Positions 4,230-52,289 are shown, counted from the stretch's first letter. The stretch: 64,000 nt of DNA from Bigelowiella natans CCMP2755 (GCA_000320545.1 ADNK01002625.1:1-64000); one strand, 5' to 3'. A program made the numbers and translations. Notes: generated by a model not told the origin, from the letters alone.

Positions 4230-5240
4230 CACAAGCTACACGGCTATTGCTAGATTGCTAGATTGCTGTCAATGCCAACACTCCATCAAATTTTGTTTTC
4301 CATTGCTAGATTGCGACACATTTGCGTGCACATGATAGTCTATTATGCACACATTGTGGTCTAGACTGCACAAACAAAATGATGCTTTTTGCACCCGTCA
4401 CTGTAACCGCACTAGCGCATCTTTTCATTTTGTCCAGCTATAGCCAGTTCGTATATGCGCATGCTAGCGATAGCAGCATGAACAATGACGAGCGATGTGT
4501 GATTGTCATGTGAGCAGCACAGAGCACTATGTGCTACAGCATGCTCTAGTGCTAGCTAGCTAGCTAACTAGCATGCTAGCATGGTGTATGTCGCATGTTG
4601 TCATTATGACAATGCAAACTTTTTCCGCACATGCATGTCCATGGATGTCTAGATGTGCAAAAGACGCACTGGATGTGAGAGCTCATGATCAGTACTTTCT
4701 AGCTCTAGTAGCAGAGCTTTTTGTGTTAAAGTTTTGCTTTGGCTTGAGCAATAGGCAAGCAACGCTAGACTAGCTAGCTAGAGTGAGTGCTAGTGTTGCA
4801 TGCTGTCTAGCCGTGTGTGTCTAGCTGTGCTATGATGGACAAGCAATACTCGCTTATTGCTAATGCAAATGCTCTTAATGTCTAGACGTGCAGCAATGTT
4901 ATTTTGTCATTGCAAGCTGTTGATGTCTAGACATGTACACACGTTCTAGACGTTCTCTAGTTTTGACAAATACTATCACACGTTCTAGCGTTGTAAACAT
5001 GATCTAGATGCATGATGTGCACAAGCTCTAGAAGCTAGCAAGCCAGTTCTGGATAGCACACCTAGCTAGCTCTAGAGCTAGCTAGATGACTCTAGAACTC
5101 TACGGCGACTAGGAAGATAGTACCAAGTCTAGAAGTACGCATAGCTAAATAATGTGGCGACGATGTTACAAGTCCATGTGTCTAGCACATGTGCTATGTC
5201 TTTGAATACACTGCAACGCACTTCATGTGTGCTGAATAAT
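4230..5240. other. TpA-depleted, CTAG-rich intergenic block 1
   Basis: (CTAG)n runs at about 4551-4572, 4766-4781 and 5062-5085. Rich in TG/CA/GCATGC. Lies between convergent 3' ends. Depletion is less complete than in blocks 3 and 4. Confidence 0.75.
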
Positions 5241-5625
5241 TGTACGGACAATCAACCTCATTCTACCATTATGTCGGCCGGCAAGGTTCAGCATGATCTT
5301 GTATTACATCTATGAAATTTACTGTGCACCTTAGCATAAAAATAAGCTGTACTTCTACAAGCATGTACTTACGGATTCTTTGGTTATAAAAATAATAAGT
5401 ATGAAACAATTACAGTACTAATGACTGCTTTCTGACAGAAAAAAGAAATTATACTGAAAATCGAGCCCTGACGGTTGATAATAATTTCAAATTCCACGTT
5501 CCACCACATAATATTGGAACTGTATGTCCAAATAAACCTGATACTACTATTTTAACTGCAATCGTCATTAATTCTTACAGGGTAAACTCTAAAAATCTCA
5601 TTACCAAAGTCATTCTACGACTTCC

Positions 5626-9212: not shown

Positions 9213-10545
9213 CTAATAGATTTTGCAACTATTATCTGAAGTTACGAGTGGACAACAAGTTTTCTCTTTCTTCTGTTGCGAAACCTTATGTACACATTGT
9301 TTAATCTAGGTGAGTTTTCCTGGGGGCTCAGAAGAGCCAGGTACGAAAATCAAGATGAAATTATGACGTATTTACAGCAACTTTAATAATAGCAGGTCTG
9401 AAAGGAATCAAATTCGCCCCGTTTCTACAAATAATTACTTTTTGAGCAAAGTGCTTTTGTAATTGTTTGGTTCATACAGGCGATAAATCAATGATTGATA
9501 CGGCACTTCGAGAAACATATGAAGAGATGGTAGCTTTACATGCTGTACTGGTTGAATTTCAAGATGATAGGATTATGTAACTTTATTTTTAAGATAGTAT
9601 AACGACTGGCTCAACATCCAAACTTACACGCTGAGCCTGTTATCGTTCTGCTCCCCCTTGTGAATATATGATAATTGAAATTGTGCTAGCAAAAGAAATG
9701 TTTACCACGTTTGCTTCTCAGGGAATAGAAAGAAATCGGATTGAAGTTCTTGGACAAATAGGAGAAGTAGTACCAAAAAGATCATGGTAGTATGTGTTCT
9801 GTAGGATTCATAGTATTTGTTTTGTCCCTTCTAGTTTCCATCGAAGCACAATGTTGGAGTAACAGCAGTGGTCAGTGTATCTTGCATTACATACTTCAAT
9901 ATGGAGACGATCTCGCACAGCGTGAAATGAGTTAGTATTTATGTGATCAAAAGGTAGGCATTTTGAGTGGAGACATAGATCTTGAAAAGGTATTTCCAGC
10001 AAGCAGCAGCAGCCATGCAATAGTACCGTTACATAAACACCTCAATACCGCTACTTAATAACTCATCAGGATCCACTAATAAATCCAAATTCGGACGAAA
10101 TAGAGACAAATTTTATTGTTGCCATAAGTGCACTTCAAAATCCAGATAATTGGACTTGGGTGTGTAATCGTCATCATTATTTATTCATATAGAGTGTTTG
10201 TATGATCGAGGGCAATGCGTGCGATGATACTTTTGCATGGCAGGACGATTTTGGTCAACATGGCAAGTTTCCACGGTACATTCGATCTCCGCATCCAATC
10301 TGGGGAATGACAGCGGTGCTCAATAACTATGGCCAGGTTTAGGCTGCCTAAATTAAATTATATTAACATATTGCTTTTTGTAGGTAATAACGAAAAGAAT
10401 TTTGAGTGAGATAAAGGAATCAAGGAAGGAAATGATGGAAGATCGTAGGATAGTGGGTAATGATTTTGGACCAAACAAGCACGATAATAATGGGGATGAT
10501 ATCATTACAGAGCAACCATATGCTGGTACAATTTCTAAATTTTAA
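8316..10545 (+). CDS. Nudix hydrolase, CoA-pyrophosphatase NUDT7/NUDT8-like
   Basis: Exons give KRAAVLIPICN (about 8847-8880), VSFPGGSEEP|GDKSMIDTALRETYEEM|GI (Nudix box), NSDEIETNF and HPIWGMTA; stop at 10543-10545. The start codon is approximate. Confidence 0.88.
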
Positions 10546-10739
10546 AGAATCCATAAATTAAGCGCTCAGCAATATAGAAAGAATAAAATATGGCGCATAA
10601 GCGATGAGGGAAGAATACGTTATATTCGTCTTGCATCGATACAAATTTTGATGCGCCGGCGACCACTGTAAACGGTGCATAGTTCGAGTACATGTCATTT
10701 GCCGATGAACTGTGCTTGAGCTTGCGTAACACCTTTGTT

Positions 10740-11830
10740 TTGGGCACGTTGACCAGATGAGTTAGCTATGTTGAATGCCTTGAGAACATTGACGCTTACG
10801 CAAGTGCTAACTCACTAGCTAGACTAGTTTATTGGTAGAAATCATGTACAGCGTTGTTTGAATGAGCATGTGTGCATCATAGAAGATTGTCCATTAGCGT
10901 TAGGCACACAGCCAAACTTAGGTAAACTGGTGGCAGTACATTTAGACACATCGCACACTAGCTAGCTAGCTTGTCGCGAAAACTTGAACATAACTAGATG
11001 AGTACGCACACTGTTCAAGGCTTCTCTTCCAATTTACACTTTCACACATTCCAATCCTCGCACGTCGTGCGCATCACATGAGTTTCACAGCGCTAGTCAT
11101 TGTTGTGCTGCGATCGCGCCCACGCACGACGTTGCATTTGTTTGCGAAAAATGACAGAGCATGCCATGCGGTGCCTGTTAGCCTGCGCTTGCATGATGTG
11201 CAACATGCATGTGCGTAGCAACGTACAAGAGCAATGAGGTGTCTAGCTATAGCTAGCTAGCTTACGGCTTAATGAAGTGGTTGCTCAGCGCATCGCTAGC
11301 TGCGCTAGATCGCAAACAAGCTAGAGAAAATGAAGCATGTATGCATGTGCCCTCTAGCTCTGCTCGATAGTGACGCTTCTTCGCGGCCAAATGAGCACAG
11401 GCGACCTAGCCACCAGCTACCCTGCTAGCCTGGTGAAAAATTCAACGCCGGGATTTACCCTAAAAACGTGCATTTTGTAGCTGCTGATTGCACGGTGCGA
11501 AGCTAATGGATGCACAGCAAAAATTGCTTTTGACTCTCTGTGAGCTTGCGATGAGCGACAAGCTTGCGTCATGTTGTGATGAGCAAAATCGATCAGGTAA
11601 CTAGTGGCAGACTATTATCAGGTTAACTAGCTAACGGTGTGTGCACTTCTAGCATTTTTGCCTCACCCATCCATCTCGTCGAACAATTTGACCTTCTTTT
11701 TGCGAGCTGTCGAAGTATTTTTTGACCATGTTGTCATCGACATTGTAGCCTCAAATTGAGGTCATAACTTTTGACAAGCTTATCTCTTTATGTGTGACAA
11801 TTAGATGCTAGCAATGATAATGCGATCATG
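10740..11830. other. TpA-depleted, CTAG-rich intergenic block 2
   Basis: CTAGCTAG runs at about 10958-10970 and 11244-11261, with abundant TGCA/CATG. Lies between the convergent Nudix and TPI-fusion 3' ends. Confidence 0.75.
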
Positions 11831-11971
11831 TTGTTTCGGTTTATGTGACCAAAATCCTTAGAAAATTATAGTATTTTTTCTGATTTATAAATAAATGGAT
11901 GAAAACTAATCTTAGAGTAATCTTTGGTATGTGGTGTTGTGGTGATTGAATGATATCGATAAACTGATCTT

Positions 11972-14900
11972 TCAAAACTTGTTTCCATTTCGCTGCAAGT
12001 GGAGCAAGAAATTGGCCGCCATAGCTGCAGTAGCCGTCATAGAATTTGAGGATGAGGAAGATGATCCATTGCCGTCAGATGTATCCACAGTGTTGCTTTC
12101 ACTTAAATCTTCCTTTAATTCAGACAAAGTGGGTTCTACCGCATCTGATTCAACTTTCTTCTCAGATGAACTATCAACCACTTTGCTGACTTCTTTTTGG
12201 TCACCAATTTTAGCTTTCTTGGCATTTGTTGCTTTGGAAGCAATGTCAAACAGTGGGATAAATCCAATCCTTCCGTTGCGATAGACTACCTTCTGCATTG
12301 GAATTTCATCTTTTTCCTTCTTCTCAGCTTTGATATCTTCTTTCTTCTCAGCCTTGACTTCTTCTTGCTTCTCAGCCTTAGCAGCCTTTACTTCTTCCTT
12401 CTTCTCAGCCTTAACAGCCTTGACCTCTTCTTTCTTCTCAGCCTTTACAGCCTTGACTTCTTCCTTCTTCTCAGTCTTAACTTCTTCCTTCTTCTCAGCC
12501 TTAACTTCTTCTTTCTTCTCAGCCTTGACTTCTTCCTTCTTCTCAGCCTTAACTTCTTCCTTCTTCTCAACCTTGACTTCTTCCTTCTTTTCAGCCTTAA
12601 CTTCTTCCTTCTTCTCAGCCTTGACTTCTTCCTTCTTCTCAGCCTTAACTTCTTCCTTCTTCTCAGCCTTGACTTCATCCTTCTTCTCAGCCTTGGCTTC
12701 ATCCTTCTTCTCAGCCTTAACAGCCTTGACGTCTTCTTTCTTCTCAGCCTTAACTTCTTCCTTCTTCTCAGCCTTAACTTCTTCCTTCTTCTCAGCCTTG
12801 ACCTCTTCCTTCTTCTCAGCCTTGACTTCTGCCTTCTTCTCAGCCTTGACCTCTTCCTTCTTCTCAGCCTTAGTAGCCTTGACTTCTTCCTTCTTCTCAG
12901 CCTTGACTTCTTCCTTCTTCTCAGCCTTAATTTCTTCCTTCTTCTCAGCCTTCTCAGCCTTGGCTTCATCCTTCATCTCAGACTTGACTTCGTCCTTCTT
13001 CTCAGCCTTACCAGCCTTGACGTCTTCTTTCTTCTCAGCCTTGGCTTCATCCTTCTTCTCAGCCTTGACCTCTTCTTTCTTCTCAGTCTTGACCTCTTCT
13101 TTCTTCTCAGCCTTAGTAGCCTTGACTTCTTCCTTCTTCTCAGCCTTAGTAGCCTTGACTTCTTCCTTCTTCTCAGCCTTAACCTCTTCCTTCCTTTCCT
13201 TCTTAGCGGTCTTGACTTCTTCCTGCGTCTCAACAGCGACGTTTGCTTTGCTCTTAGAAACCACCTCTGCATCATTCTTCTCCTCAGCTGCTGTAATTTC
13301 CGTTGAATCCGAAGACTTTGCGTGAATTTTGTCCATGTATGTTGCCTATAGTTACATTCCAAATAGCGCAGGAAGATTATATAGAATATAAGATATCGTA
13401 ATTACAATAACATACATTTGTTTATCTTCCAATTGTGGTAGTTGTATCACCTCTGGGATGCCTCTTGCAGTGATGCTAACAGGCAATTTCACGCCCAAAA
13501 GGCTTCCTAAGAAGACGAGACGTCAAAGCACACACACACACACACACACATAGAGTGAGAGAGAGAGTGAGTGAGAGAGAGAGAGAGAGAGAGGCAGCGA
13601 GGTTGGGTTAAACACTGAATGCATCATTTTGAAAAGTTCATGAGAAAACTTCCTTTCTAGCGCCATAATCCTACCTTGTTCAGGCCCTCCACGAGTTGTG
13701 ATGAATAAAGTATCTAGATAGATATTGGTGGTGGTATCAACAACGATGAACATTATTTGACCTTTAAAAAGAAGATGAAAGGAATAATATTTGGAGAAAC
13801 GACGGTAGTAGTATCATCAAAAAGAGACTGCTACCTAGATTGGATCCCCCAATAGTCACTGAGGTAGGGTTATGGCCTTTCACATCCACCACAACATCGA
13901 TATTGCCTTCTGGAGAGATTCGTATTACTTTTTCTCCTCCTGTTATAGCAACCTGGTATTTGTTGATAAAAAGTGATGATGAGCTTGGCGACTATCACCA
14001 CGTTAGTAGCGGTTATGTTATTACACGTGTATAGTCATTTCTTGTGTTTCGTATTCTTCCAAACTATACTACTCGAATATATCTTTCATATTGGTAGCTT
14101 GCTTTGTCCATGAATTATTGTTGTTATTGATGATGATTATCACCCATATTCCTCCTTCTGAGTCGGTGTTAGCACCATCAGGCATCCCTGTGTAAATAAC
14201 AATAAACATTTGTAAGATCAAGTGTAAATAACAAGAAACATTTGTAAGAAGCAGGCACCCATCTTCTCACATCACAACTTCTGCACCTACTACGACTAGT
14301 AGTACCACCTGCCATCTCATTAGGCAATTCTTTGAACAAGATAGGCTCAGAGAGAGGAGATCCGTCAGCAGTTGCATCATACTTAAACTTGAAGATTCGT
14401 CGAGTAGGCGTGTCACAGAAATACATTCCTTTAATTTAAGGAGGAGTAGGAGGAGGAGGAGGAGGAAGAAGAAGAAGAAGAAGAAGAAGAGAAAGAAGAG
14501 GACAAAAGGGTATTATAAACCATCAGCTTTAGGAGGGACCAGTAGCTATGAAGAAAGCTGCTGTAATTACATGGGAGAACACACACACACACACACACAC
14601 ACATCTCGTGATCTACCTTTTCCATCGGGGGTGAAAGATATGCAGTTAGATACCCTGATAGATTATGTGGGAAAGAAAGAAAGAAAGAACCAAAAAGGAA
14701 GAATAGATCATGCCGGTAATGACGATGATGTAGAAATAAATCAACAAATGAATAAATAAATGAACATACGTCTAATAGCAAAGGACTAAAAAGGAAGAGA
14801 TATCAGAGAAAGAGAGGAGAAAAGTAAATATGATACAGTAAAGATGTTAATGTAGCACTTTTTTTTTATGGAAACAACGATTCATGCCTGTGATGATACT

Positions 14901-15378
14901 GAAAAACAATGATGATGCTTATGTTGGTGCTGCTGCTGCTGCTGCTACTACTACTTGCTACTCATATGTTTATTAGCGTGTGCTCATATCCAACCATAAG
15001 AGAAAGATGTTGATGGCGACCTGTGCTTTGTGTTCAGTATCTTTCGTAACCCCCCTTCGCTGTCAAGGCGATATAAAGATCCGATCTAAGAGGGAGGGGT
15101 TAAAAACAACCAGAAGAACCAAAAAAGACGTATCATGATTTTTGTAATGATATTACATTTACCTCTTGATTAAATGAAACATCGTAACACTCTCTTCAAA
15201 GATGATTCAAATCTTCACACCTCCTGTGCATTGAATTTATGCTGAAAGTTATAGCTTCCTACGATAAGATTTCCATTCCTATCACATCTTCCATCGTTTG
15301 GCCTGGTATCTAATCCTTCGTAAGTTGCCTCACTCCAGTCAGAGATTCTCTCAATATTTTCCAATGAATAATAGGAGG

Positions 15379-15414
<36 letters not shown>

Positions 15415-16627
15415 AGTTAGAAGCGGAGGATGCAGCTGCTGAAGATGATGAAGGCAATAATCGGTAAAAGCCATCTTGTAGACCAACTAGCACTCCACCA
15501 CTAAACATATTATTATGTGTTTATCAAATCAACACTCGTTTCTTCTGAGTAGTAATTTGTAATTTGAGGATGCATCATCTATCTAACAAGTTGTTGTTGG
15601 TGCAACTAATAACTTATCTAGCTGCTATTACTATTATCATTTGTAGTAATAGTGGTAGTAGTAGTAAAAATATCTCTAAATGTAGTGAAATGTAGTAACT
15701 ATATTGTAGTAGATGATGTTATTTCCCTACTGTTATGGATGGTATATTCTGATTTGGAATACTAGCACTCTTATTACTATTTATTATTACTATTACTATT
15801 AAAATCATTATTTTCACTATGTGTATTCTTCATTGAATACCCCTCTCTCAAGGCAACACATCCAACCATGCTGGGCATCGATCTGAAAATAGTAGTAAGT
15901 TGTAGTTGTTGGAGAGTAGGATATTAGTTCACGTATCTACTGCTGCTGGTGTCTCAACATGAATAATTCATTTTAACTGTAGTGAGGTGGTGTTGCTTGC
16001 TACTCGCTATTTACTCGAAACAAACCACATCACAAAAATGCTGTACAGTTAGGGGGAGGGGAGAGCTGCCTAATATTCAATAGCTAATTGTATTCAAGGG
16101 ATTATAATGGTGGAAAATATGTAGAGCTTTCATTGTACATCATATATCTTAAAGTAACATATAATAACCATTTGTTATATCTCACGTGTATTATTGCTAC
16201 TATTCTTTCTAATGAAGTTGTTGCACGCACACAGATCTAGCCTCCCTTGGTGCTGTAGAAGGATCCCAATACCACAACTTCTTTCCTGAGATGGTGGGGG
16301 TGGTAAGTGGACGGAGGAGGAGGAGGAGGAGGAGGAGGAGAAGGAGGAGGATCAGGATAAAGAGAATTTTATAGGAGGCAGGAAGAACTATCTGGTGCCT
16401 ATCTTTCCTAAAATGCTGATTATAATATGTGTGTGTGTGTGTGTGTGTGTGTACGAATAATCATGTTGATGATGGTCTTACTTCCCCCTCTCCTGTATTT
16501 TTTACTACATAGAGTAATAGTAGTAGTACCTTGAATATCCACCCAATAGAGCTTATTCTCACGTGCACTCCAAACGGGTGACTCTCCTGATCAAATTATT
16601 CAAAGCAACACGGAGTAAGATACACCT

Positions 16628-16661
<34 letters not shown>

Positions 16662-17334
16662 ATATCGTTTAAAGATCGGCTATTTGTGCTAATAACTGTC
16701 ACCTACCAAACATTTTTCTTTTTTTTGCTTTCACTTCATTAATTTCAAAAGCGATTTCAATGTTGATCATACAGCCTGAAAAGAGTCTACGCGTAAAGTG
16801 GTATACCAAGATCATTTCTGCATGGAACTAGCTCCTCTGCTTTCAGATACGTGGCCCCACCTTTCTCCTAATTTAGAAGAAGAAGAGTACAAAACAATAA
16901 GAACAAATTATGATGATGACAGATGATCATGGAAGGGAGAAGAGAGAGAAGAAGAAGAAGAGTTCAAGAAGAGAAGATCTCACCCAGTTTAGTATTACGA
17001 TTAATGGTGAAGAAGTGCTTGTTCATCATATTTGTATGTCTAACCCCCCACCATTACAACTACCATCACCACCACCTCTCCTCATTGAGATTTTCATCAT
17101 ATACAACTCACAACATGCTACTAGATATATTATCACTGTTAAATGCCATCATCATCATCATCATCATCATCATTAGTGGTGGCATATCAATATTAACATA
17201 GTCGTTCTGGTACATATATGAATTGTATGCCTGTCACCAACCTCTGCTATTTTTTTAAGGGTATCTTTGGCCTTTTCTAGCTTTTGAGTCACCTCCTCGG
17301 ATGCTACAGTCAGCTACATAATATATCATATTTA

Positions 17335-17373
<39 letters not shown>

Positions 17374-19361
17374 TATATAAACCACAAGACTACGACTGCT
17401 ACAAAAAGCTTTAAAGTTAACTTGGCTACAGCCTGAATGTATGTGTGTATGCATCACATGATGTTGAGAAGAATGCCCTCTATTATTATGTTTCTTATTC
17501 TCACTATTGATATTATTCGTAATGATTATTTGTCACCTTTTTTACTTCTTCAACAGCATCCCACACCTCATTAGCCCCTAGTTAGTTGTAGTGAGAACAT
17601 AATATTGCATAGAATCATTTACTCATCATTCTCATCGTATGCAGCAGCAAACCAATCGATCGATGATGATGAAGATGATGATGATCTTCAGAATAATACA
17701 TGGTAGTATGTTGAAATCGAGTCTTTCAGTAACAATTTCGTTACGATTGACCCCTCCAAGCCCTTCGTTTATCATCTACCGCTACTGTAACAACAGTGTA
17801 ATATATCGTATAATTATCAACTGCAACTACTACTACCTATTGGTAGCACGCTTTTCGTGAGAGCCGGCGAAACTCCTTGTTTCACACCTAGCAGCAATGA
17901 GCAAAGTTAGGGAGATATATCAAACCGTCTACCAAACCGTCATCAAGCTGCTGATAACAAGGGGAAGGAGCATCAACACATTAAATATCGTGTGTGTTTG
18001 CTATATGATAGCTAGTTACTACTACTCATTTGCTATTTGCTACGAAGTGATTATAGTAGCAGTATGCATTTATGAAAATCTGTCTCGACGATTCTTCTTC
18101 TTCTTCTTCTTCTTCTTCTTCTTCTTCTATTGAAAACATGAAAGGAAGTAGGGTTATACTTCCTACTGACCCAACATTACCTGCTTCTAAAGCGGCCGAT
18201 GACACGATGTTATTGAATTTATCAGCGGAGAGTGAGGCCCTGTGGGTGGCAGAAAGAAGAACAAAAAGAAGATGTGTGTAAGAAGAACAAACAAATATAA
18301 CTCATACCATGACGTGAGAGGCCATCGTATTATTTCTCATGTACTTGTTTCTAATGTTATTTCTCATGTACTTGTTAGTTATTAGTATATATAGCTAACA
18401 TGTAATGAGGAAAGTTATACAGCTTTCACCATCTTCTTCTTTTTCTTCATCTTCTTGATCTACATGTTCGTCTTGACTACAATACTTCTTCTACTACTAC
18501 TTACTACCCGCCAACAAGAGCTCCATCAATATCAGGCATTTGCAGTAGCTCTGAACTTGTTTCTGGTGTTACACTACCACCGTACCTTAACATTATCATT
18601 ATCAACAATTTACCATCAGTATCCTATCATAAGAACAATATCATCATAATCATCTGTATTTCCAGCACATCTCGATGGAGTCCACATAGTCATCTTGCTA
18701 TGATGTCATCAAAAACTACCAGTAGTAGTAATGCACAACACAACACAACGAAGAAGAAACTTCTATTACTGAATCGATATGTAGCTTGCAGCTTCTTTGC
18801 CTGTGAAGTAAATCATTCATGCAGATGGTGTCATCAAATGCGAGCGGCAAGGTGTCAAGTGGCGTGATGATGTGGTAAGAGAAAGAGGAAAGATGGTTGC
18901 TTATAAGATGATGATGATGATGATGATACACCTACCATATTGATTCTCAAGCCAGGTTCTGATGACCTAATAACAAACAGTTTAAGAACCTCCCAAGGAA
19001 AGGGTTGTAATCGATTTAACTAAAGAAAGATCATCGTGAGAGTAGTATTAGTCACTAGGTACTCCTCTCTCGTTTTATTATTTTTTCTTTTGAGCAGAGG
19101 AGGAGCAGCAGCAGCATTGACCTTATGCACTGCTTGCGCAATCTCAGGTGTTGCGGTTAACCCTGTACCTATTGCCCATACAGGCTCGTATGCAATGGTA
19201 AGATGCTGAACCTGAGAGTGAGTAGAAGGATGCAGTATCATCACACATCGTCATCAGGAGAGGAAAAGGAATAAACTATAACCATCGCCAAACATACATA
19301 TTATACCATTCCTTCATTCGATATTCAAATATGTGTGTCAGCAATAATTGCATGAAGAAGC

Positions 19362-19404
<43 letters not shown>

Positions 19405-20335
19405 TCTCTCCCTCTCCCTCACTCTTTCTCCTTTTTTCTCTTTTACTATAGTGTAAAATGTTTTTTTTTTACCACTTCTCGGGTAGATACCCCAGCAAGA
19501 CCCTGATTGAATCATTAATAATAATAATAATAAGGCGATGATAAAAGCAGCAGTAAGTATTGGAACTAAATTATGATGATGGTAAATAATGCTGACTTTA
19601 GATAACGACTTACAATTAGGATGCTGGTATTGATGATGATAATGGTGGTGTTAAAATGAGGAAAACATAGCTGATAAAGTGTTGTTTCATCTTATTATTT
19701 AACATCGTCATCATCATCATCATCATCATCATCAATAATACACCAATTAACACCTTTGCCAGTTGTGTAGTGCACACGCTTTCGACAAGATCCGCTTGAA
19801 ATCTTAAGTATATTTGGTGATGCACAATATTAATATTAGTAAGGAAGGAAGGAAGAGGGACGTTATCATACAGCATTTTATGTATGATTTTTATAATTAC
19901 TAATATTGTACACATAAAACTACAGTAGATGTCTTTCACTTTGGCACTTTTAATAGTAGCATGTGCACACCACAAAACAAAGTGAAATAAAAGCAAAAGA
20001 AGACTTACTCTTCAAAAGTCTCCCCTATACAGAGCACAACGTCTAAATCCTTAAAATTGAAGAAAAAAAGGAGGGGGAGGAGAAAGAGCCATATTAGTGA
20101 TGAACTTGCTTATTGATAATTTATAAATATTGTATATGTGAAAGTAGTATCACCTGTGTCAGGGCTGCTTTGACTTTCAAGTTGATTTCCTCGTCTGTTT
20201 CCTACATAATGAATTATAGAAGTAGTAGTAGTATTAGTAGTAGTAGCAGCAGCAATTAGGGGAATCATAAATAAGACTACGACAACGACGAAATGGATGC
20301 TTCATGACCGTTGTTAGTAATGTCACTATTCCATA

Positions 20336-20381
<46 letters not shown>

Positions 20382-20808
20382 CCTAAAGCAATTCTGAATT
20401 CAAAATAACCTTGCAACTACTTTTATCTCTTCTATCATGATCTCTTCACTGCTATACTACAGCAGCCTCTCTTATGCATTCACGCACAGGTGTTTATCTT
20501 GTTTTACCTTGAATATGCTCCGTCGTTCACTATGACCTGCCAGTATAGCATAGTCATCATTAAGATATGATGGAAAAGCCAAAATATGAAGAAGAGTAAC
20601 ATATTAACATTCCGAGCTTTCAGTATGTGAATCTCTTCTCTTTCTTTCTTCTCCCTTTCTCTCTCTCTCGCTCTCGCTCTCGCTCTCTTCTTACCACACA
20701 GAACGAAGGATGCTCCTGCCGATTTGAGCATAGAAGCAGCTACCCCACCAGTGTGAGCCCCACATCTTCCTGAGAGAAAGAAGTAGTAGGTGTCATACAC
20801 TAGTCCCG

Positions 20809-20845
<37 letters not shown>

Positions 20846-21246
20846 CGTGTGTAACATAAATAAAAACATAATAGCTATACAAGATTGAAAATATCTATCA
20901 TTGTTTGAGCTAGGATGTTCTTTTCTACTACTACCCTCCCAATGAAGGTCTTGCGCTCCTACCTTTACCCCAGTACCTTCAATATCACATTAAGACAAAC
21001 AGAAAGCAACGAGAAGGAAACGACGGCAATGATGGTGATGAATGATAATAAAATCCAGCTGATTCATAACTCAAAGGTTGATGAGTATTGGTTTCCAAAT
21101 CATTTATGTCATACAGCTTTAACAAACGATTAGAATGAGGTACCCATGATCACATCATTGATATCATTTACACAACATGCAAAATGTGAATAATGGATTC
21201 ATTCAGCAGCTAAATAAAATAATATCGATGATAATGATGACTACAT

Positions 21247-21315
<69 letters not shown>

Positions 21316-22538
21316 AGAATACTTGCTACGACAGGGAGGAATGGGGAAGGAGGTGTAACTCCAATTCGAATACTGGGCAAATCTGGTCTATCCCTTTGAA
21401 GGGCTGCAAGCAAGCAAGTAAGCACCGATAATAGTCGAGTTGTCATCCAAATCAGTTAAATTAAATGTGTGTAACTGCTAGCCTTCTCTTCTATTCTTTC
21501 CTATAAAGCAGGCCTATACCGTGTAATCAAGCTACGACGAAGCTAATGAATTCGACAGCATATATATAATATACACACACAAGTATACATGTACATGCGA
21601 AGAAGCACCAATAGCTGCTGCTCCGACGAGACTTGCAAGAGACTCAGCTTCAGTGACGGTTCCTGGATTCATCTTCCAGTTTCCTAATGGGAGGGGTGGA
21701 AGGGAGGGAGGGGAGGGAATGGGGTAGTGAGGAAGGAGAATAAGAGGGAGCTGAACTACCACGATTAAAATATCCACAAATCATTGACATCAGTAGCCAA
21801 CAACGTTATATCATCATCTCATCCTCCTTTCGTTTGACCTCTTCTATTCCCATTCATAACTTCAATTAATAATGCTTACTAGCACGTAGTACCTGCTACA
21901 AACATTTGTCTTTTCTCTACTCCCCCCCCCTCTAGACCATTGGCAGGTCCAGCAATGGCGGATGTGATGGACTCAATCTGATCTTCCTTCGATGCATACG
22001 CTGGTGAGATGTGCGCCTTATGGTGGTGAGAGAGGGATGATGAGGAAGATACAAAAGGATAACGGGAGACGATGCTCAGAGGATGTCGTCGTAATTGGTT
22101 ATGATGACGAATTCGTGGCGAAGCTGGTGCAAAAGCCCGTGTAGTAGGAGCAGTTCTTGACAAGGGTACAGCAGGTCTTATATCACTGCGATGATAACAC
22201 AATGATGGTCAATGACGATGGTGACGCCAAGTCACAACAACCGAAGAAATATCGGTGCAAGCGTAGTGGTCATTTGTTGTAGTAGTGAAGGAGATCGAAC
22301 CTGCTGCTGCTCAACAACAACACTCCCAGAGTAGCCGAGATAGTTACCGCAGCAGCCAGAAATCCCACAGCTATGCGAATACTACTTCTTCGACTTCTCT
22401 AAGGATCATGCACGAACATTGGTAGCCAGGGATCAGAAAATCAAAGAATCAAAGAAAATAGCGTGACATTTTGTTGTGATCACTGACCGCCGACGTAGCT
22501 TGAGGTTTGATCAGGAGAGGTGCCTGGATGTGCATCAT
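11972..22538 (-). CDS. Predicted plastid-targeted fusion: bipartite leader + triosephosphate isomerase + linker + SMP-30/gluconolactonase (regucalcin) domain + KE-rich repeat tail
   Basis: Leader [17 protein letters not shown]|[31 protein letters not shown] followed by an R/S/P-rich transit-like exon. TPI motifs FVAG|[32 protein letters not shown] and LVGG|ASL are present. Phase-compatible GT-AG junctions carry the frame through SSAALEA|GVKQG..LPI|[14 protein letters not shown]|LTVASEE..KKIAE|[11 protein letters not shown]|GESPVW..LYWVDI (SMP-30) and ..RGIPE|[10 protein letters not shown] into ORF 11972-13336. Confidence 0.75.
12320..13220 (-). repeat. Coding tandem repeat, 24-nt unit encoding KAEKKEEV, about 30-35 copies with occasional 9-nt (ATK/AVK/AAK) inserts
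   Basis: Directly visible as ttcttccttcttctcagcctt(a/g)ac on the + strand and in the translation of ORF 11972-13336. Confidence 0.95.
13451..16867 (-). CDS. SMP-30/gluconolactonase/LRE (regucalcin-like) beta-propeller domain of the fusion gene
   Basis: [80 protein letters not shown] and LFITT are family-typical motifs in the expected order. Confidence 0.92.
18181..21910 (-). CDS. TPI: Triosephosphate isomerase domain of the fusion gene
   Basis: Catalytic Lys (NWKMN, about 21680), His (GHSERR, about 20530), Glu ([11 protein letters not shown], about 19190) and phosphate loops YGGS and LVGGASL are all intact. Confidence 0.95.
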
Positions 22539-23182
22539 CTTGGATCGAACAGATCCTGCCGAAAATCAGGAATACTATTCGACTAAAATGTGTCCTGCAG
22601 TTCGCTCAGCACGCGAGTATTACAGGGGGGTGTGGCCAAAGGGGAGGTGCAAGCAATCGAACGAAGCTCGTATTTGTACGACAGCCACGTTCGAACTTGT
22701 TCTCGTGGTTGGTGTAGGATATGTCGCTACATTACCGGTAAGATCTAAACTAGATCACTCCTGCTTTCTTGTACAACACCGATCAAATGGATCATGGGAT
22801 TGCGACAAGGAATTAAGACACTTTTTTTTAAGTAAATTGCCGTTAGCAAGTTGGGTCATACGGGCCTTCGAACTGTTACATTGGTTCTCCTCCACAAAGC
22901 CACGGATAAAATACCCGTAGTCATATGTACCCAAAATCCACCAAGAATTTCGATGTCGCATCTTACTAAACACAGGTGAAATTTCTAGAAATCGGATTGA
23001 CATCCAGATATGTTGCTGCTGCTGTGGCCACGTGACTAGGGTTTCCTTTCGAAAAGAGTCGAGAGGACTCGATGAAACGAAAATCTGTCCGGAAAACATC
23101 TACTGGTTGAACTACATTTTTGAACTACGACAATCTAGAAGTACAGTTCTTCAAAACAATGGGGCAATTTTCCGATGACCTA

Positions 23183-24510
23183 AAAAAGATCTTCTTGAAT
23201 CTCCCAGCTGCATGTTTGAGTTTTGAAACCACAAAATCCCGCAACAAGGAGGAGACGTTGCTTTCCGTGTTCGAACAAACGGAGAAGATTCAAAATCTTG
23301 AATCTTGAAGATTCAAAATCTCTCAAGAACACTCTCGCACTCGTGGTTCGCAATTCCTCTTCTTCTTCTTCTTCTTCTTCTTCTTCTTCTTCGTCATCAT
23401 CACGGACCTCTCGGCACTTCAGACTTCTGGACTTTTCTTTTTCCTGGTTTCTTTGCGTCTCCAGCATTCTGGCATCACTGAACTCGCCTTGGATTTTGCG
23501 GCACTTGGTGATTTTCGGGTTTCCTCAGGAAAGTTGATGCTGTGATTAGGCTAGCAGGGCTTCCTGCCCACCAGCCTGGCCAATGGCTGCTGTGGCAAGC
23601 CCTCCAGCACCAGCTAGCTAGACACCTGAAATTCTGTGCTGATGTTGGAATGATGTGCTAGCTAGCTAGCTAGCTAGCTAGTGTGGCCCACACTAGCACA
23701 CACACGTGGCAAGCTAGCGAGTCTGCTGTGCAGTCTAGCTCCAGCTGCACTAGCTAGCTAGCTAGCCAGTCCAGCCAGATGGACAGTCGCTCTGCACATG
23801 GCTAGCCAGCTAGCTGGGAATGATGGACGTGTGTCCACAATGGGACTGCGTTGGCTAGCTAGCTAGTCATTGCTAGCTAGCTAGACATGCGCATGTGGAC
23901 TAGCGGACCACAGCTAGACAGCATGCGATGCAGACTGCGCACAGCACCAGACTAGCAGAGCACACTCGCTAGCACTCGATCTGACACTCTCAATCGAATT
24001 GGATTTCCAAATTGTTCTGTTCATGCTGGCATGTTCTCTTTCCCTCGTTCGGCGGCAAACTTGCTAGCTAGCTAGCTAGCTTGTGGCGTGAATTTGACAT
24101 CCATGCAAAATGATAGACACAGCAATGCACTATTTGTGCATTGCATGTCTATCATCAAAAACAGAAAATGAATCTGATTGCCTAGCTAGCTAGCTAGCAT
24201 GCAGCACTCAGGATCAAGTTGTCAGCAGCACGTAGCTGCTAGTGACACGCGCTAGTTCCAGTATTAGATGAAGCTACAGGCACACATACTTCAACACATA
24301 GACATGCACATGTTCGATCACTTGATTGCACAAACTTGCATTGCAACTACTTTCAGCATTTGTGCATGACGAACGTGAGATAGATCTCTAGCAGCTACAT
24401 GAGCGCGTGATCATGCAACATGACAATGGACACAACACATGTGCATGCCGTAGCGTGTGTGCTATGTGCCATGCGTGTAGCACACGTGTACAGCGTCTTT
24501 AGGCATGCTG
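23183..24510. other. TpA-depleted, CTAG-rich intergenic block 3
   Basis: By eye there is no TpA from about 23183 to 23545, then TpA occurs almost only in CTAG up to about 24110. Long (CTAG)n runs at about 23658-23682, 24064-24080 and 24182-24197. Confidence 0.85.
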
Positions 24511-25863: not shown

Positions 25864-27842
25864 TTGATGATGATGTTGATGTTGATGATGATGTTGATGA
25901 TAATGATTTATAAAAACAATTATGGAACAAAATGGGTTGATTCTCATCGTTGTTAGATATTGGTGTCTTAGTCGTCGTTGTCTTACATGTGGTAATAATT
26001 GGTTGATTGGTGGATAAAAATTAGAAAATATGATTTGAGAAGTTGATGCATGAATGTCAGCTATTTCCTACTACTACTTCCGCTACAACAACAACAACAA
26101 CAACTACTACTACTACTACTACTACCACTACTACCATATGAGCTTGTAGCAGTCTAATAAATGGCCATGGTTTTGAATCTGATGCATAAAGGTGCACCGT
26201 TGACACAAATACGGAATTGTCGCTATTCCTTGGCGTAGTCTGCTTCTTCTTTCGTTGGTCACTGGCCATGCCCCCCCCCTTAATTTCATGTTTGAAAGAA
26301 TATGAAGGAGTTCCCGTAGGAGTGGGAGGGACCATCATCATCATATTTTTTCTCAGTTTCGGCGTTGGAGGGATGGGGAGTGGGGCGCTTCTCCGTGCTG
26401 CTTTCATAGCTTCAATAGCAGCCATAGATGGTGGTTTAAGCGACAAAGAACTTTTACGTCGTGAATTCGATGAGTAGGAGGAGGAGGAGGAAAAACTGGA
26501 GGCACGGCTACTACTGTTGGCATTGAAGTCTTGACCCGAGGTAGTATTATTATTATCATGATCATTAGTAGTTGCAGGGACTACTCGTTCCAACTCAAAT
26601 ATCAAGGCTTTTCGATTACACTTAAGGACTCTGCACTCGTCTTCAAATAAACGGTTATATGTTTCTATGTCGCTTAAATTTTTGTGTGCAGTGGGGAGAA
26701 ATGGCGACTTGAGCATATTTGCAAATTTCTTTCTTAATGTGCTATTACTATTGCTCCTATTTTTATCTTCGGACCACCCTCCTTCACCTTGAGCTTCCTC
26801 ATTCTTGCTCCTACTACTGCTTTGCCTTCTCATCTCCCTGGCCCATTTCTCAGCTACATCCAAAGAAACAACTTCATGTCGAACTTTTCTGAACACACTC
26901 TTTCGGTAGAAAATAGCACATCCATACTTGTGATTGCCCGCATACTCCCCATCGTAGCCCAAATGTTGCATATTTTGGATCCAATGCGTTTGCCAGTGCT
27001 TTTTATCAACCTCTTGAATGCATATCACATCTGCATCGTAAACACGAATGTGTTTCAGTAAGTTGTCTTTCCGATATGGCCATTGTAAAGCCCAGCCAGG
27101 GCATTTGCCTTTGAAACCTTGCCTAGTTGCCGCATCAGCTAGCGTATTCCACGTCAATAAACGAAACTTACCCATCCCCTCATCAATGGATTCCGAACGG
27201 TTGATATTTCTGTGATGCTTCCAAGGTCTTGGTGATGGCGTGCTTGGGTGTGGAATAACCGGCTGGCTAAATTCCAAGTAAGGCTTTTCATTTACCATAA
27301 GATTCACGCGTAGCACAAGGCCAACATCTTCTTGCTTCGGCGTGTACTCCCAAGTATCTCCAACAACCTCCCATTCTGACACTACCTTTCTCTCTGATGA
27401 AGAGGAAGAAGATGGAGACGATGAAGAAGATGGCTGAGAAGACTTGGCGTTGGTTGTTGTCTGTTGGTGTAGTAGTAGGTGCTGCTTGTTGTTCTTCCTA
27501 TACCATTTGATGGAATCCGGTCTCCTTGAAGGATCTGCTATCTCTGGATGAAGGGCAACACCAACAACAGGTTGAGGCAGTCGCACTATTTCGAATAGAT
27601 CTAAAGGGGGAGGCCGATGCCGCTGTGGTAGAGCCATATGGTTGTTCTGCACGGAAGGTGATCTACGGTGCGTGCCTATTTAGGAATGATACGAACAAAG
27701 AACAATAGCAATGTGTATAAGTTGATGATGCATACAGAAAAGAGAATGTAGCGGTGACAAAGTGGAAAAGTAGTATTATTCTGATCACCTGTCGGCTTCT
27801 TTCTTGGTGATTCAGCAGAAAAATTAAGCTTCAGATCAGGGC
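24730..27842 (-). CDS. CCR4/PDE12/nocturnin-family EEP deadenylase with a plant-CCR4/PDE12-type N-terminal domain
   Basis: ORF 26057-27652 has PVVGVALHP..WYR..WEVVGDTWEYTPKQEDVG, WNTLAD, WPYRKDNLL, ICIQEVD, GCAIFYRK and STVHL. Downstream exons give GDFNSAP, MRSAY..EP, YVWCT and SSDHQPL. Both ends are approximate. Confidence 0.9.
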
Positions 27843-43009: not shown

Positions 43010-44318
43010 TAGTAGCAGCAGTGGAAGTAGTAGTAGTTGGTTTGAAACAGATAGATGCAGTAACAACTACCATTCATACAATAACTACAATAACTATGTT
43101 AAGTCGTGCAGTTCTAGACGCAGTATTGGTAGTCAACATCGTCATCATCATTATGGCCATTGAGTATGCTACTGCACACCTTGATTCCTTCCTCCTCCTC
43201 CTTGTTCTTCTTCTTCTTCTTCTTCTTCTTTCTCTTTTTAACTCAAGATATTTGGAGTTCTCCGTGGCAAGCAAAGAGCAAGAAGTTACTGCTATAGAAG
43301 CGAGTAGACTTCAAGTACTAGATACAATGTACCAATACATGATCAATGAAAACAGAAAAATAGAGGAGAGAAACAGAAACAAAGCAGCAGCTTCAAAGGC
43401 ATCCTTATCATCAACGGGTAAAGGAGAGAATGATTTCCTGTACAACACCACCAAGATAGTCAACGAGCGCAAGGATATCGAAGATAGAATACGCGGAAGA
43501 AGAGATGCAAGGAAAGATAGGACGGAAAGACTCATGGGGTGGCTAGAGTACCTCGAAGCAAAGTCTCTAAGACTTAAGAACAAAATATACACGGATCCTG
43601 GTGATACACGGCTAGACTACGTGGCAGGTGATGCTGATGTACACGGAAAAACCTTGCATAGCAGAGAACACAGTGGCTTTATTGAGGTTCCAGAACCATC
43701 CAGCATCGTCTCCATGAAGGATGATCGTATAGATGAGACGATGATACCATTCGAGGTCGAGGTAGAGCGCCCAGATGGCACGATGGAAATCAAAACAAGG
43801 TCCTTTCACACGCAAGAGACTCTCCTAAATGCTGAAAAACTTCAACAGGAGCTCAGAGCTGCTGTTGGGAGGAAGGGGATTGAAGTACTATCCCCCGTGA
43901 ACAGCAGCAGCAGTATTTGTGATGCCTCTGCCCTACTTCGGAAAGTTGCAAAGCCACCAGCACTATCATCATCATCATCATCATCATCATCGTCGTCGTC
44001 ATCTTCAAAAGGACGGCAACAACAGCTTAGTGCTGCTGCTGCCTGTTGTTGTAGTGGTAGTAGTAGTGACAGTGATGCTATGAAGAATGAATCTCAAGAA
44101 CAGCAGCAACAGCAAGGAGGCTATGCTGATGATCTCATTTCAATATCTGGTTCTTTGTCTCCGTTTGGTGAAACCATCACCGATGATGAGAAGAAGAACA
44201 ACAACAACAACAACCTAATTACTTGTGGCAGCAATAAGGCCGTTAATGATGAAAAGGAGGTCATCTTTGCCGATAAAGGTACTAGGATAAACCAAATTCT
44301 ACCCCCGCGCTATCTCTC

Positions 44319-44358
<40 letters not shown>

Positions 44359-44439
44359 TCTCAGGTGTGTAGTGTGTATTTGATAATTATGCTCAATGGT
44401 GATATAATAATACTAAATGATATATCAGGTAAATTTTGA
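32957..44439 (+). CDS. Large multidomain protein: NHL-repeat propeller, RanBP2-type zinc finger, up to three PDZ-like domains, C2HC-type finger, coiled coil (could be two genes)
   Basis: NHL repeats: AMFETPMGIAID, VADTDNNRIRRI, LNSPRAVACDKHGNVYIADSSN and FHNPAGLCIDKYGNILVADTTNCKIRRL. Zinc finger WRCSLCGNMN..CANCG at about 37172. PDZ-like segments KPLGITL..GVSINDSLITIN, IGFEY..GVEVGWRILNVN and PFGML..GVRAGDIIIGVDG. YCSSCGKMF..HEAKC at about 42040. Confidence 0.65.
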
Positions 44440-44529
44440 ATGCAAACGTATCGTATGGCAATATCTAGACATATTAATGAAGATCGATATGATGATGTAA
44501 GCCTGTAAATCAGATTAAATGTGGTACCA

Positions 44530-46090: not shown

Positions 46091-46433
46091 GGAGTTATTA
46101 TGGCTGCACATCAAAATTCAATGCGCGTCTACTCATCGTCTGGTGATCATTGCATAGATAAAAATCACGCGAACCCTTAGTGAAGAGTGGACGAACAATC
46201 GCATAGAAATTCTATCTGGCAAGGTATGTACTGATCGTGTCTTAAGAATCCTTTACTAAATTATAAACTTAGTTCAAGGACACAAAAGACGAGAAGTAAT
46301 GCACATCTAGCTATAGAAATGTGCGATATAGAAGCAAGCAGCAGCAGTTACACTCGATTGGGATTGACGGGCTAGGATCCTAAACAGAATTTAACTACTG
46401 CCCCATATACCACGATTCCAGTACATTTGTAAT

Positions 46434-52207: not shown

Positions 52208-52289
52208 TTCCACAAAAGAAAATTGTACGCGGAAGAAATAGTCTGCAGGTACTAATTAAAACACATCTTTGTGATTGTTGGCGCATGGA

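What the first reader, a model, noticed from the sequence alone, without database searches (positions are those of the whole stretch)
13451..22538. Plastid-targeted TPI fused in frame to an SMP-30/gluconolactonase domain
Seen: TPI has no stop after LVGGASL..NIVSS. Four small exons (about 17837-17887, 17537-17577, 17242-17313 and 16808-16868) keep phase through canonical GT-AG sites directly into the first SMP-30 motif (LGESPVW). No separate start or promoter gap is evident. Both domains keep their key residues (TPI K/H/E; SMP-30 E, N, N, D-type metal ligands). Known: TPI-GAPDH and PGK-TPI fusions exist. I do not recall a characterised TPI-lactonase fusion, though it may be present unannotated in other algae. 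Inference: it could couple triose-phosphate metabolism to lactone hydrolysis or metabolite repair in the plastid.
Basis: partly seen in the sequence, partly recalled or inferred. Interest (0 to 1): 0.8.

Follow-up and report, generated by a model that had tools for sequence, protein, structure and literature searches.

The report
Conserved algal TPI–lactonase fusion gene
The window (Bigelowiella natans) does carry one intron-rich gene that joins a plastid-type triosephosphate isomerase to an SMP-30-like sugar lactonase, but this locus is already a public gene model and the same fusion occurs in over a hundred algal proteins, none of which appears to have been studied.

Summary
Confirmed. On the minus strand, 33 GT-AG exons (22538 to 11975) read without a stop. 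In order they encode a bipartite leader, a complete TPI (Lys/His/Glu kept), a helical linker, a complete SMP-30/SGL propeller (Glu, Arg/Asn, Asn and Asp kept) and a Lys/Glu-rich repeat tail.

TPI has no stop and the SGL part has no Met. Every TPI and SGL exon aligns collinearly with a transcript-derived Lotharella globosa protein of 796 aa. Linker exons LB, LC and LD are conserved in Lotharella and/or Amorphochlora, and the linker length matches (55 vs 53 residues).

More than 120 public protein clusters carry TIM+SGL in one chain. They come from green algae, chlorarachniophytes, diatoms, a xanthophyte and a haptophyte. None of the 80 best prokaryotic loci is fused.

JGI model Bigna1 80758 maps at 100% to this locus and already fuses the domains, though its SGL exons are partly wrong. 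So the gene is real but not new to databases.

The gene also runs further than reported. Exon S12 splices into a 1.37-kb tail exon. No paper describing the fusion turned up, so its function is untested.

The joined spliced model was never searched or folded. Exons were searched by reference.

The parts
22000..23500 (.). CpG-normal 5' region (probable promoter and first exons) upstream of a CpG-depleted gene body
   Evidence: CpG o/e is 0.9-1.0 here against 0.2-0.6 over 11750-21750.
22488..22538 (-). Exon T1: ATG and 17 codons of the leader
   Evidence: Same start as JGI model 80758.
22301..22398 (-). Exon T1b: hydrophobic, signal-peptide-like part of the leader
   Evidence: max KD 2.18. The JGI model uses only its first half, so the borders are uncertain.
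21893..22185 (-). Exon T2: S/T/R/A-rich transit-like region and the start of TPI (..RQMFVAG)
   Evidence: The JGI model starts this exon at 22016.
21609..21683 (-). Exon T3: TPI NWKMN with the catalytic Lys
   Evidence: z=14.
21311..21403 (-). Exon T4 (TPI)
   Evidence: z=16.
20935..20976 (-). Exon T5 (TPI)
20695..20769 (-). Exon T6 (TPI)
   Evidence: (Pfam TIM).
20508..20536 (-). Exon T7: HSERR with the catalytic His
20154..20201 (-). Exon T8 (TPI)
20009..20049 (-). Exon T9 (TPI)
19754..19802 (-). Exon T10 (TPI)
19473..19502 (-). Exon T11 (TPI)
19122..19211 (-). Exon T12: [11 protein letters not shown] with the catalytic Glu
   Evidence: TIM, E=3e-10; z=27.
18936..18966 (-). Exon T13 (TPI)
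18770..18800 (-). Exon T14 (TPI)
18508..18585 (-). Exon T15 (TPI, YGGSV..LVGG)
   Evidence: z=21.
18181..18239 (-). Exon T16: end of TPI ([19 protein letters not shown]), no stop, donor gtaatg
   Evidence: (aligns over its whole length to L. globosa 361-379, z=12).
17837..17887 (-). Linker exon LA (not conserved in sequence)
   Evidence: Used by the JGI model. No significant similarity to orthologues.
17752..17784 (-). 33-nt in-frame exon used only by the JGI model; a possible cassette exon or a prediction error
   Evidence: It falls in a gap in both chlorarachniophyte orthologues. No similarity.
17537..17577 (-). Linker exon LB (start of the linker helix, ..[11 protein letters not shown])
   Evidence: collinear match to L. 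globosa 396-406 and A. amoebiformis 346-356, with 2 to 8 of 5000 shuffles as good.
17242..17313 (-). Linker exon LC (rest of the linker helix)
   Evidence: full-length collinear match to A. amoebiformis 357-380 (45 of 5000 shuffles); the matching part of the L. globosa model is one helix, 394-430.
16807..16867 (-). Exon LD: first strand of the SGL domain (..[14 protein letters not shown]), no ATG, TAG just upstream in frame
   Evidence: 0 of 5000 shuffles.
16530..16586 (-). Exon S2: GESPVW with the metal-ligand Glu
16231..16285 (-). Exon S3 (SGL); missing from the JGI model
   Evidence: (z=9.5).
15841..15882 (-). Exon S4 (SGL); the JGI model reads it in another frame
   Evidence: (z=14).
15221..15500 (-). 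Exon S5: an in-frame Ser-rich insertion, then TRPNDGRCD (Arg and Asn of the sugar pocket)
   Evidence: z=27.
15021..15085 (-). Exon S6 (SGL)
14617..14654 (-). Exon S7: VSNCISF with the metal-ligand Asn
14309..14428 (-). Exon S8 (SGL)
   Evidence: z=21.
14144..14187 (-). Exon S9: MPDGANTD with the metal-ligand and catalytic Asp
13835..13952 (-). Exon S10 (SGL)
   Evidence: z=19.5.
13675..13713 (-). Exon S11 (SGL)
13451..13506 (-). Exon S12: end of the SGL domain (..ARGIPE), donor gtgata in phase 0
11972..13345 (-). Exon X1. ATYMD completes the conserved C-terminal motif. About 335 residues of Lys/Glu-rich 8-residue repeats and a 110-residue end follow, then TGA.

Best explanation
This is one nuclear gene of Bigelowiella natans, on the minus strand from 22538 to 11972, with 33 exons and about 1241 codons. 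It encodes a single polypeptide with five parts:

1. A bipartite leader (signal-like, then transit-like).
2. A bacterial-type triosephosphate isomerase.
3. A linker of about 55 residues whose core is one 37-residue helix.
4. An SMP-30/regucalcin-like six-bladed propeller with its metal and sugar-binding residues intact.
5. A lineage-specific Lys/Glu-rich repeat tail.

Shown here:
- The reading frame is continuous through canonical splice sites.
- The same TIM+SGL chain exists in orthologues, including transcript-derived ones.
- The locus is identical to public model Bigna1 80758.

Inferred:
- The protein enters the plastid through the ER route.
- TPI dimerises as TPIs do, bringing two lactonase domains together.
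- The TPI part interconverts DHAP and GAP.
- The propeller hydrolyses or forms a sugar or sugar-acid lactone with a divalent metal.

Which lactone it acts on, and why that step is tied to TPI, is not known.
For: - The exon model has all GT-AG introns of 89-374 nt, 2352 nt without a stop up to S12, and exon GC 0.47 against intron GC 0.355.
- Pfam finds TIM and SGL on single exons.
- An exon-only search found P0006, which holds TIM 19-210 and SGL 235-483 in one chain.
- More than 120 clusters carry PF00121+PF08450, and 14 of 14 re-scanned members have both.
- The closest relative is L. globosa MMETSP0112 (796 aa). Its JGI contig L014 carries the ORF unbroken.
- Exons align collinearly to that orthologue.
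- The long linker is shared by three chlorarachniophyte genera. LB and LC are conserved, and the length is 55 vs 53 residues.
- P0150 (Bigna1 80758) maps at 100% and fuses TPI, linker, SGL and X1.
- In the alignment to regucalcin 4gn7, the Glu18, Arg101, Asn103, Asn154 and Asp204 equivalents are kept. Their roles are described in PMC3551927.
- The AF2 model of the orthologue shows a TIM barrel, helix 394-430 and a propeller.
- The other TPI loci of the genome are stand-alone. One paralogue stops 23 residues after GGASL, about where T16 has its donor instead.
Against: - No transcript of B. natans itself could be examined, because records of the window's own genome are withheld.
- The JGI model is a prediction and is wrong in several SGL exons.
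- LA has no detectable conservation.
- CpG o/e rises to 0.8-0.9 at 17500-18250, between TPI and LB. That could mark an internal promoter.
- Many ATG-first exons could mechanically be spliced to LB, LC, LD or S2: 179 combinations in all.
- Plastid targeting and both enzyme activities are inferred from sequence only.
- Fusion proteins of this kind may be cleaved after translation (Kroth et al. 2008, PMC2173943).
Confidence: 0.9

Rival explanations
1. There are two adjacent genes. TPI ends by read-through of the T16 donor, with a tail ..NVGSVG..(E)n..ANSK and a stop near 18028. The SGL gene has its own promoter and an ATG-bearing first exon in 18180-16870, for example ATG 17775 spliced to LB.
For: There is a CpG o/e bump at 17500-18250. 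A mechanically possible first exon runs 17775-17700 into LB, among 179 combinations. No B. natans transcript was seen.
Against: The orthologues, including transcript-derived ones, are single chains with the same junction and a linker of matching length. T16 is conserved right up to its donor. The 17775 piece has no similarity to any orthologue. The read-through tail runs through a (GAA)12 microsatellite of intron-like composition.
Confidence: 0.05
2. The fusion gene ends just after S12 by read-through (..[15 protein letters not shown], stop at about 13355). The Lys/Glu-rich ORF (ATG 13336 to 11975) is a separate downstream gene.
For: X1 has its own ATG three codons after the acceptor. It is a single 1.37-kb exon, unlike the 29-293-nt exons upstream. 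It has no homologues or Pfam match. The X1 head shows no local similarity in the shuffle test.
Against: The conserved end of the family is G-[IL]-[PA]-E-[PA]-x-[FY]. S12 'GIPE' plus X1 'ATYMD' fits AEFFD and TEFDD of the two closest orthologues, whereas the read-through 'VIQ' lacks the aromatic residue. The 105-nt GT-AG intron is in phase 0 on both sides. Only 115 nt separate S12 from that ATG. The JGI model joins them.
Confidence: 0.18
3. The linker differs from the model given here. The 33-nt exon 17784-17752 of the JGI model is included, always or as a cassette exon, or LA is skipped or replaced.
For: That exon keeps the frame and has AG/GT borders. LA itself is not conserved.
Against: The extra 11 residues fall in a gap in both chlorarachniophyte orthologues. 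Without them the linker is 55 residues against 53 in L. globosa. The piece shows no similarity.
Confidence: 0.2
4. The SGL propeller is not an enzyme here. It serves as a binding or scaffold module, for instance one that places TPI in a plastid sub-compartment such as the pyrenoid.
For: Thalassiosirales orthologues carry the Pfam DPC4_N motif, named after a diatom pyrenoid matrix protein (bioRxiv 10.1101/2023.10.26.564148). Family members have long low-complexity tails.
Against: The metal ligands and the Arg/Asn of the sugar pocket are invariant or nearly so across 14 diverse members. That is what purifying selection on catalysis would give. No DPC4_N motif was found in the window's leader.
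Confidence: 0.15

Closest known systems
JGI gene model Bigna1 80758 (fgenesh1_pg.74; P0150, 1135 aa) of Bigelowiella natans
   Same: It is the same locus. There are 100% matches from ATG 22538 through T3-T16, LA, LB, LC, LD, S2, S6-S12 and X1 to the stop. Pfam finds TIM plus SGL.
   Different: The public model shortens the leader and adds a 33-nt exon (17784-17752). It omits S3, reads S4 in the wrong frame, truncates S5 and over-extends S11. The model given here is collinear with the orthologues throughout.
TIM+SGL fusion proteins of other algae: Lotharella globosa MMETSP0112 P0134, Amorphochlora amoebiformis P0149, Chlamydomonas eustigma, Mantoniella, Prymnesium parvum, many diatoms, Tribonema
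   Same: Same domain order, same junction (..GGASL..F..I.. then ..AEEVV.C.N.LGESPVW) and same C-terminal G[IL]PEPEF motif. Identity is 40-60%.
   Different: Only the three chlorarachniophytes have the linker of about 55 residues with a 37-residue helix; the others have 10-25 residues. Only B. natans has the Lys/Glu repeat tail of about 335 residues. Tails and leaders are lineage-specific.
TPI-GAPDH fusion of stramenopiles and some cercozoans (Liaud et al. 2000; Nakayama et al. 2012, PMC3527533)
   Same: TPI is the N-terminal part of a two-enzyme chain with an organelle leader.
   Different: The partner there is the next glycolytic enzyme and the address is the mitochondrion. B. natans was reported to lack that fusion. 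Here the partner is a lactonase with no known adjacent reaction, and the leader is of the plastid type.
SMP-30/regucalcin (gluconolactonase, PDB 4gn7, 3g4e) and firefly luciferin-regenerating enzyme (5d9b)
   Same: These are the best solved relatives of the SGL part (E 1e-26 to 1e-29). They share the six-bladed propeller and the same Glu/Asn/Asp metal ligands and Arg/Asn pocket.
   Different: Those are stand-alone cytosolic proteins of about 300 aa. The substrate of the algal domain is unknown.
Bifunctional PGK-TPI of Thermotoga (NCBIfam NF010569)
   Same: A TPI fused to another enzyme. The TPI part here scores best against that bacterial model and against bacterial TPI structures.
   Different: TPI is the C-terminal part there and the partner is PGK. 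The score here is far below that family's cut-off (267 vs 883 bits), so this is not a member.

Membership tests
Triosephosphate isomerase (Pfam PF00121) | Sequence match to the TIM profile over the whole barrel | tested here: met
   Single exons T6, T12 and T15 hit TIM. The public model of the locus scores 263.6 bits over profile 1-244. Exons T3-T16 are collinear with the orthologue's TIM domain.
Triosephosphate isomerase (Pfam PF00121) | Catalytic Lys, His and Glu, and the phosphate-gripping loops | tested here: met
   NWKMN (T3), G|HSERR (T6/T7), [11 protein letters not shown] (T12), YGGSV and GGASL (T15/T16) are read directly. They are invariant in alignment A2.
Triosephosphate isomerase (Pfam PF00121) | Isomerase activity and dimer formation | not testable with these tools
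   Needs an enzyme assay and sizing of the recombinant protein.
SMP-30/gluconolactonase/LRE-like (Pfam PF08450) | Sequence match to the SGL profile | tested here: met
   Exons S5, S8 and S10 each match SGL just under the whole-protein cut-off. The orthologue P0134 scores 236 bits over profile 1-244. Exons LD-S12 are collinear with it.
SMP-30/gluconolactonase/LRE-like (Pfam PF08450) | Metal ligands Glu18, Asn154 and Asp204, and the Arg101/Asn103 pocket of SMP-30 | tested here: met
   The alignment of the orthologue to 4gn7 places these on GESPVW, VSNC, PDG and TRPND. The same residues are in window exons S2, S7, S9 and S5. Roles are from PMC3551927.
SMP-30/gluconolactonase/LRE-like (Pfam PF08450) | Six-bladed beta-propeller fold | tested here: met
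   The AF2 model of the natural orthologue P0134 has all-beta residues 438-725, mostly with pLDDT around 90 or above and a few lower blocks. This was not done on the window's own joined sequence.
SMP-30/gluconolactonase/LRE-like (Pfam PF08450) | Lactonase activity and its substrate | not testable with these tools
   Needs an assay on aldonolactones and phospho- or sulfo-sugar lactones.
Algal TIM+SGL fusion proteins (database family, uncharacterised) | TIM then SGL in one open reading frame, with the junction ..GGASL..(linker)..LGESPVW | tested here: met
   Phase-consistent GT-AG chain with no stop and no Met. The junction and linker are conserved with P0134 and P0149. The public model is fused.
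Algal TIM+SGL fusion proteins (database family, uncharacterised) | One mRNA and one polypeptide in this organism | not testable with these tools
   Records of the window's own genome and transcriptome are withheld. Shown only for the L. globosa orthologue, via transcript contig L014.
Plastid-targeted protein of a chlorarachniophyte (bipartite leader) | N-terminal signal peptide followed by a transit-peptide-like region | tested here: inconclusive
   There is a hydrophobic stretch in T1b, then an S/T/R/A-rich T2. However, the hydrophobic core starts about 25 residues from the Met, the leader exon borders differ from the JGI model, and no predictor or localisation data were available.

The most novel reading that the evidence does not exclude
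The TIM+SGL chain may be an unstudied bifunctional plastid enzyme. It is conserved across green algae, chlorarachniophytes, diatoms, xanthophytes and haptophytes, and did not appear among the named hits from land plants. It would tie an as yet unknown sugar-lactone step to triose-phosphate isomerisation. Candidates are a gluconolactone step of an Entner-Doudoroff or oxidative shunt, or turnover of a plastid sugar acid. In some lineages it may sit in the pyrenoid, given the DPC4_N motif in Thalassiosirales. In B. natans it may be held on a long Lys/Glu-rich helical spacer.
Probability: 0.3. Interest if true: 0.6.

Novelty: already known. Interest (0 to 1): 0.35.

Why it matters
For genome annotation, the locus needs a corrected gene model, since the public one breaks the lactonase domain.

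For biology, a fusion kept in several major algal lineages usually marks two steps of one pathway. No paper found here describes it, and the partner reaction of the lactonase domain in plastids is unknown. It is therefore a cheap, well-defined target for expressing, assaying and localising. The discovery itself is already sitting in public databases.

Tried and rejected
It was replaced by numeric coordinates.
- The look-up of encoding contigs on the X1 ORF was meant to read the public gene calls around it. It came back blank because records of the window's own genome are withheld.
- One exon-internal 34-nt pattern from LC was scanned against metagenome and metatranscriptome contigs to catch B. 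natans transcripts. There were no matches.
- A search for prokaryotic fusions found that the 80 best loci match only the TPI part, residues up to about 382 of 796. The search patterns were TPI-derived, so this is weak negative evidence.
- A second fused paralogue was sought. The other TPI loci (C2771, C2037, C2180) are stand-alone.
- Six literature searches for a described TPI-lactonase fusion found none. Kroth 2008 lists three other enzyme fusions but not this one.
- DPC4 itself is not this protein. Only a short N-terminal motif is shared, and only by Thalassiosirales members.
- CpG profiling as a promoter test gave only a modest bump and was not decisive.
- The joined spliced protein of the window was deliberately not assembled for any search or fold. 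Natural orthologues served instead.

Full report
**What is there.** The stretch lies on the minus strand of an AT-rich, intron-dense eukaryotic sequence. I fixed exon borders by coordinates and checked them by script. There are 32 exons from the ATG at 22538 to 13451. All introns are GT-AG and 89-374 nt long. The exons total 2352 nt with no stop. Exon GC is 0.47 against 0.355 for introns.

- The TPI part (T3-T16, 21683-18181) keeps [27 protein letters not shown] and GGASL.
- The last TPI exon ends ..[10 protein letters not shown] at a gtaatg donor without a stop.
- Four small exons follow: LA 17887-17837, LB 17577-17537, LC 17313-17242 and LD 16867-16807.
- LD already holds the first strand of the SGL domain. 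It has no ATG and has a TAG directly upstream in frame.
- S2-S12 (16586-13451) carry GESPVW, TRPNDG, VSNC and PDG.
- Pfam recognises TIM on exons T6, T12 and T15, and SGL on S5, S8 and S10, each given alone by reference.

**Is it more than a chain of lucky splice sites?** On sequence alone the case is suggestive, not proven.
- Donor sites here are weakly conserved.
- A script found 179 mechanically possible ATG-first exons that could feed LB, LC, LD or S2.
- CpG o/e is low (0.2-0.6) over the gene body and about 1 at the 5' end. It shows a modest bump (0.8-0.9) at 17500-18250, between TPI and LB.

So the decision had to come from relatives.

**Relatives.** I never joined the exons for a search.
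- A 51-residue piece of exon S5 was searched against the representative library. It returned 13 hits, among them P0006 (637 aa), which matched near residue 330 rather than near 100.
- Pfam shows P0006 has TIM 19-210 and SGL 235-483 in one chain.
- Word searches with this natural protein and with P0134 listed the best 120 clusters. Every one is annotated PF00121+PF08450 except one SGL-only fragment of 410 aa (P0019).
- Named sources are Chlamydomonas eustigma, C. sp. UWO241, a pedinophyte, Mantoniella, Prasinoderma, Prymnesium parvum, many diatoms (Chaetoceros, Nitzschia, Cylindrotheca, Pseudo-nitzschia, Seminavis, Licmophora, Thalassiosirales), Tribonema, and the chlorarachniophytes Lotharella globosa and Amorphochlora amoebiformis.
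- Most carry the name 'triosephosphate isomerase' or 'hypothetical protein'.
- All 14 diverse members that I re-scanned have both domains.
- Among the 80 best prokaryotic loci, only the TPI part matches.

**The closest orthologue settles the junction.** Ranking by exon-wise tblastn put P0100/P0134 of L. globosa first (MMETSP0112, 796 aa). Its JGI contig L014 carries the ORF unbroken.
- Shuffle tests show most of T3-T16 and LD-S12 aligning collinearly to P0134 residues 125-730, mostly with 0 of 2000 shuffles as good; six short exons give 2-91 of 2000 and T14's best local match is off the collinear place. T16 is conserved to its last codon.
- P0134 has a linker of 53 residues where other algae have 10-25. 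The window's G+LA+G+LB+LC gives 55.
- LB matches at the collinear place in both L. globosa and A. amoebiformis (2 to 8 of 5000 shuffles).
- LC matches A. amoebiformis over its full length (45 of 5000). LD gives 0 of 5000.
- LA is not conserved.
- The alternative first exon at 17775 and the JGI extra exon show no similarity.
- An AF2 model of the natural L. globosa protein shows a confident TIM barrel, one helix at 394-430 and a confident propeller. That helix is 37 residues, the length of LB+LC. Leader and tail are disordered, and pTM of 0.44 leaves the domain arrangement open.

**Identity of the locus.** P0150, named jgi/Bigna1/80758 (fgenesh1_pg.74), maps to the window at 100% identity from the same ATG to the stop at 11975.
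- The window is therefore Bigelowiella natans, and the fusion is already a public gene model.
- The genome size of 91.4 Mb agrees, from my own knowledge, with the published figure of about 95 Mb.
- That model is imperfect. It adds a 33-nt exon (17784-17752) that falls in a gap in both orthologues. It also skips S3, misreads S4, truncates S5 and over-extends S11.

**The gene is longer than reported.** The family ends with a conserved G-[IL]-[PA]-E-[PA]-x-[FY] motif.
- S12 stops at GIPE with a phase-0 gtgata donor.
- 105 nt downstream, a phase-0 tatag acceptor opens exon X1. It begins ATYMD, matching AEFFD (L. globosa) and TEFDD (A. amoebiformis).
- Read-through would give VIQ instead.
- X1 runs 1.37 kb to a TGA at 11974-11972. 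It encodes about 36 copies of an 8-residue Lys/Glu-rich repeat (K 34%, E 29%) and a 110-residue end without Pfam matches.
- I put the inclusion of X1 at about 0.8.

**What the domains are.**
- The TPI part is nearest to bacterial TPIs (4y96, 1b9b; 42-51% to PVC-group and other bacteria), not to plant chloroplast TPI.
- The SGL part is nearest to luciferin-regenerating enzyme and regucalcin (E 1e-26 to 1e-29). The Glu18, Arg101, Asn103, Asn154 and Asp204 equivalents are kept (roles from PMC3551927).
- A tree places the three chlorarachniophytes together (100/100), on the green-algal side of a 100/99 split from diatoms plus the haptophyte. That fits inheritance with the green plastid, but the tree is unrooted and that side is unresolved.

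**Function.**
- Shown: both domains look catalytically competent, and the fusion is conserved.
- Inferred: plastid import. The evidence is a hydrophobic T1b and a transit-like T2, plus clearer signal peptides in the two orthologues.
- Unknown: the lactone.
- A side lead: Thalassiosirales members carry the Pfam DPC4_N motif, named after a pyrenoid-matrix protein of unknown function. It is absent from the window's leader.

**Literature.** Six searches found no description of a TPI-lactonase fusion.
- Kroth et al. 2008 list three other fusions in Phaeodactylum.
- Nakayama et al. 2012 reported only stand-alone TPI and GAPDH in B. natans with respect to TPI-GAPDH.
- The library is incomplete, so absence is not proof.

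**Verdict.** The object is an already catalogued but unstudied gene family, so novelty is low and interest modest.

Noticed in passing
window 4250-5500, 10500-11750, 23250-24500, 44250-46500, 52000-52750, 56000-56750, 61500-62500: GC-richer patches packed with CTAG (up to 28 per 500 bp) sit between long stretches that are either CpG-depleted (o/e 0.2-0.6) or CpG-normal (about 1). Two of them flank the TPI-SGL gene on both sides.
   Followed up: partly
window 58851-61673 (+): An uninterrupted 940-aa ORF combines a family-2 glycosyltransferase domain (residues 254-366) with a sulfotransferase domain (674-918). It is another two-enzyme chain, and intron-free in an intron-rich genome.
   Followed up: no
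window 26057-27652 (-): A 531-aa ORF has an endonuclease/exonuclease/phosphatase domain (Pfam PF03372, E=1.7e-14). It could be a retroelement endonuclease or a cellular phosphatase.
   Followed up: no
window 15380-15450 (exon S5) and nearly every intron of the gene: Microsatellites are everywhere: (GA)n, (CA)n, (ATC)n and (GAA)n. One (TCA)n run lies in frame inside exon S5 and adds a Ser-rich loop of about 24 residues that the L. globosa orthologue lacks.
   Followed up: partly
G000:C2180:5132-5878 (L005): An intron-free TPI gene (305-aa open frame, 273 bits to Pfam TIM) is 41% identical to the fused TPI. Its style differs from the multi-exon TPI genes on C2771 and C2037, so it is either an unusual host gene or contaminant DNA.
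   Followed up: no
P0117 and cluster (Thalassiosirales TIM+SGL proteins), residues 90-122: These diatom orthologues carry the 35-residue Pfam motif DPC4_N (31 bits, cut-off 27), named after a pyrenoid-matrix protein. This hints that the fusion protein is pyrenoid-associated in that lineage.
   Followed up: partly
P0006 and P0033, C-terminal ends: Some orthologues end in a short Cys-x2-Cys...Cys-x2-Cys stretch (for example CERCGCQF..CSQCG) after a low-complexity tail. It looks like a zinc-ribbon and is absent from the chlorarachniophyte proteins.
   Followed up: no
window 12314-13193 (-): The tail exon is a 24-nt tandem array (about 26-36 copies, 74-87% matching) encoding KAEKKEEV-like units. 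Its composition is typical of charged single alpha-helix spacers.
   Followed up: partly
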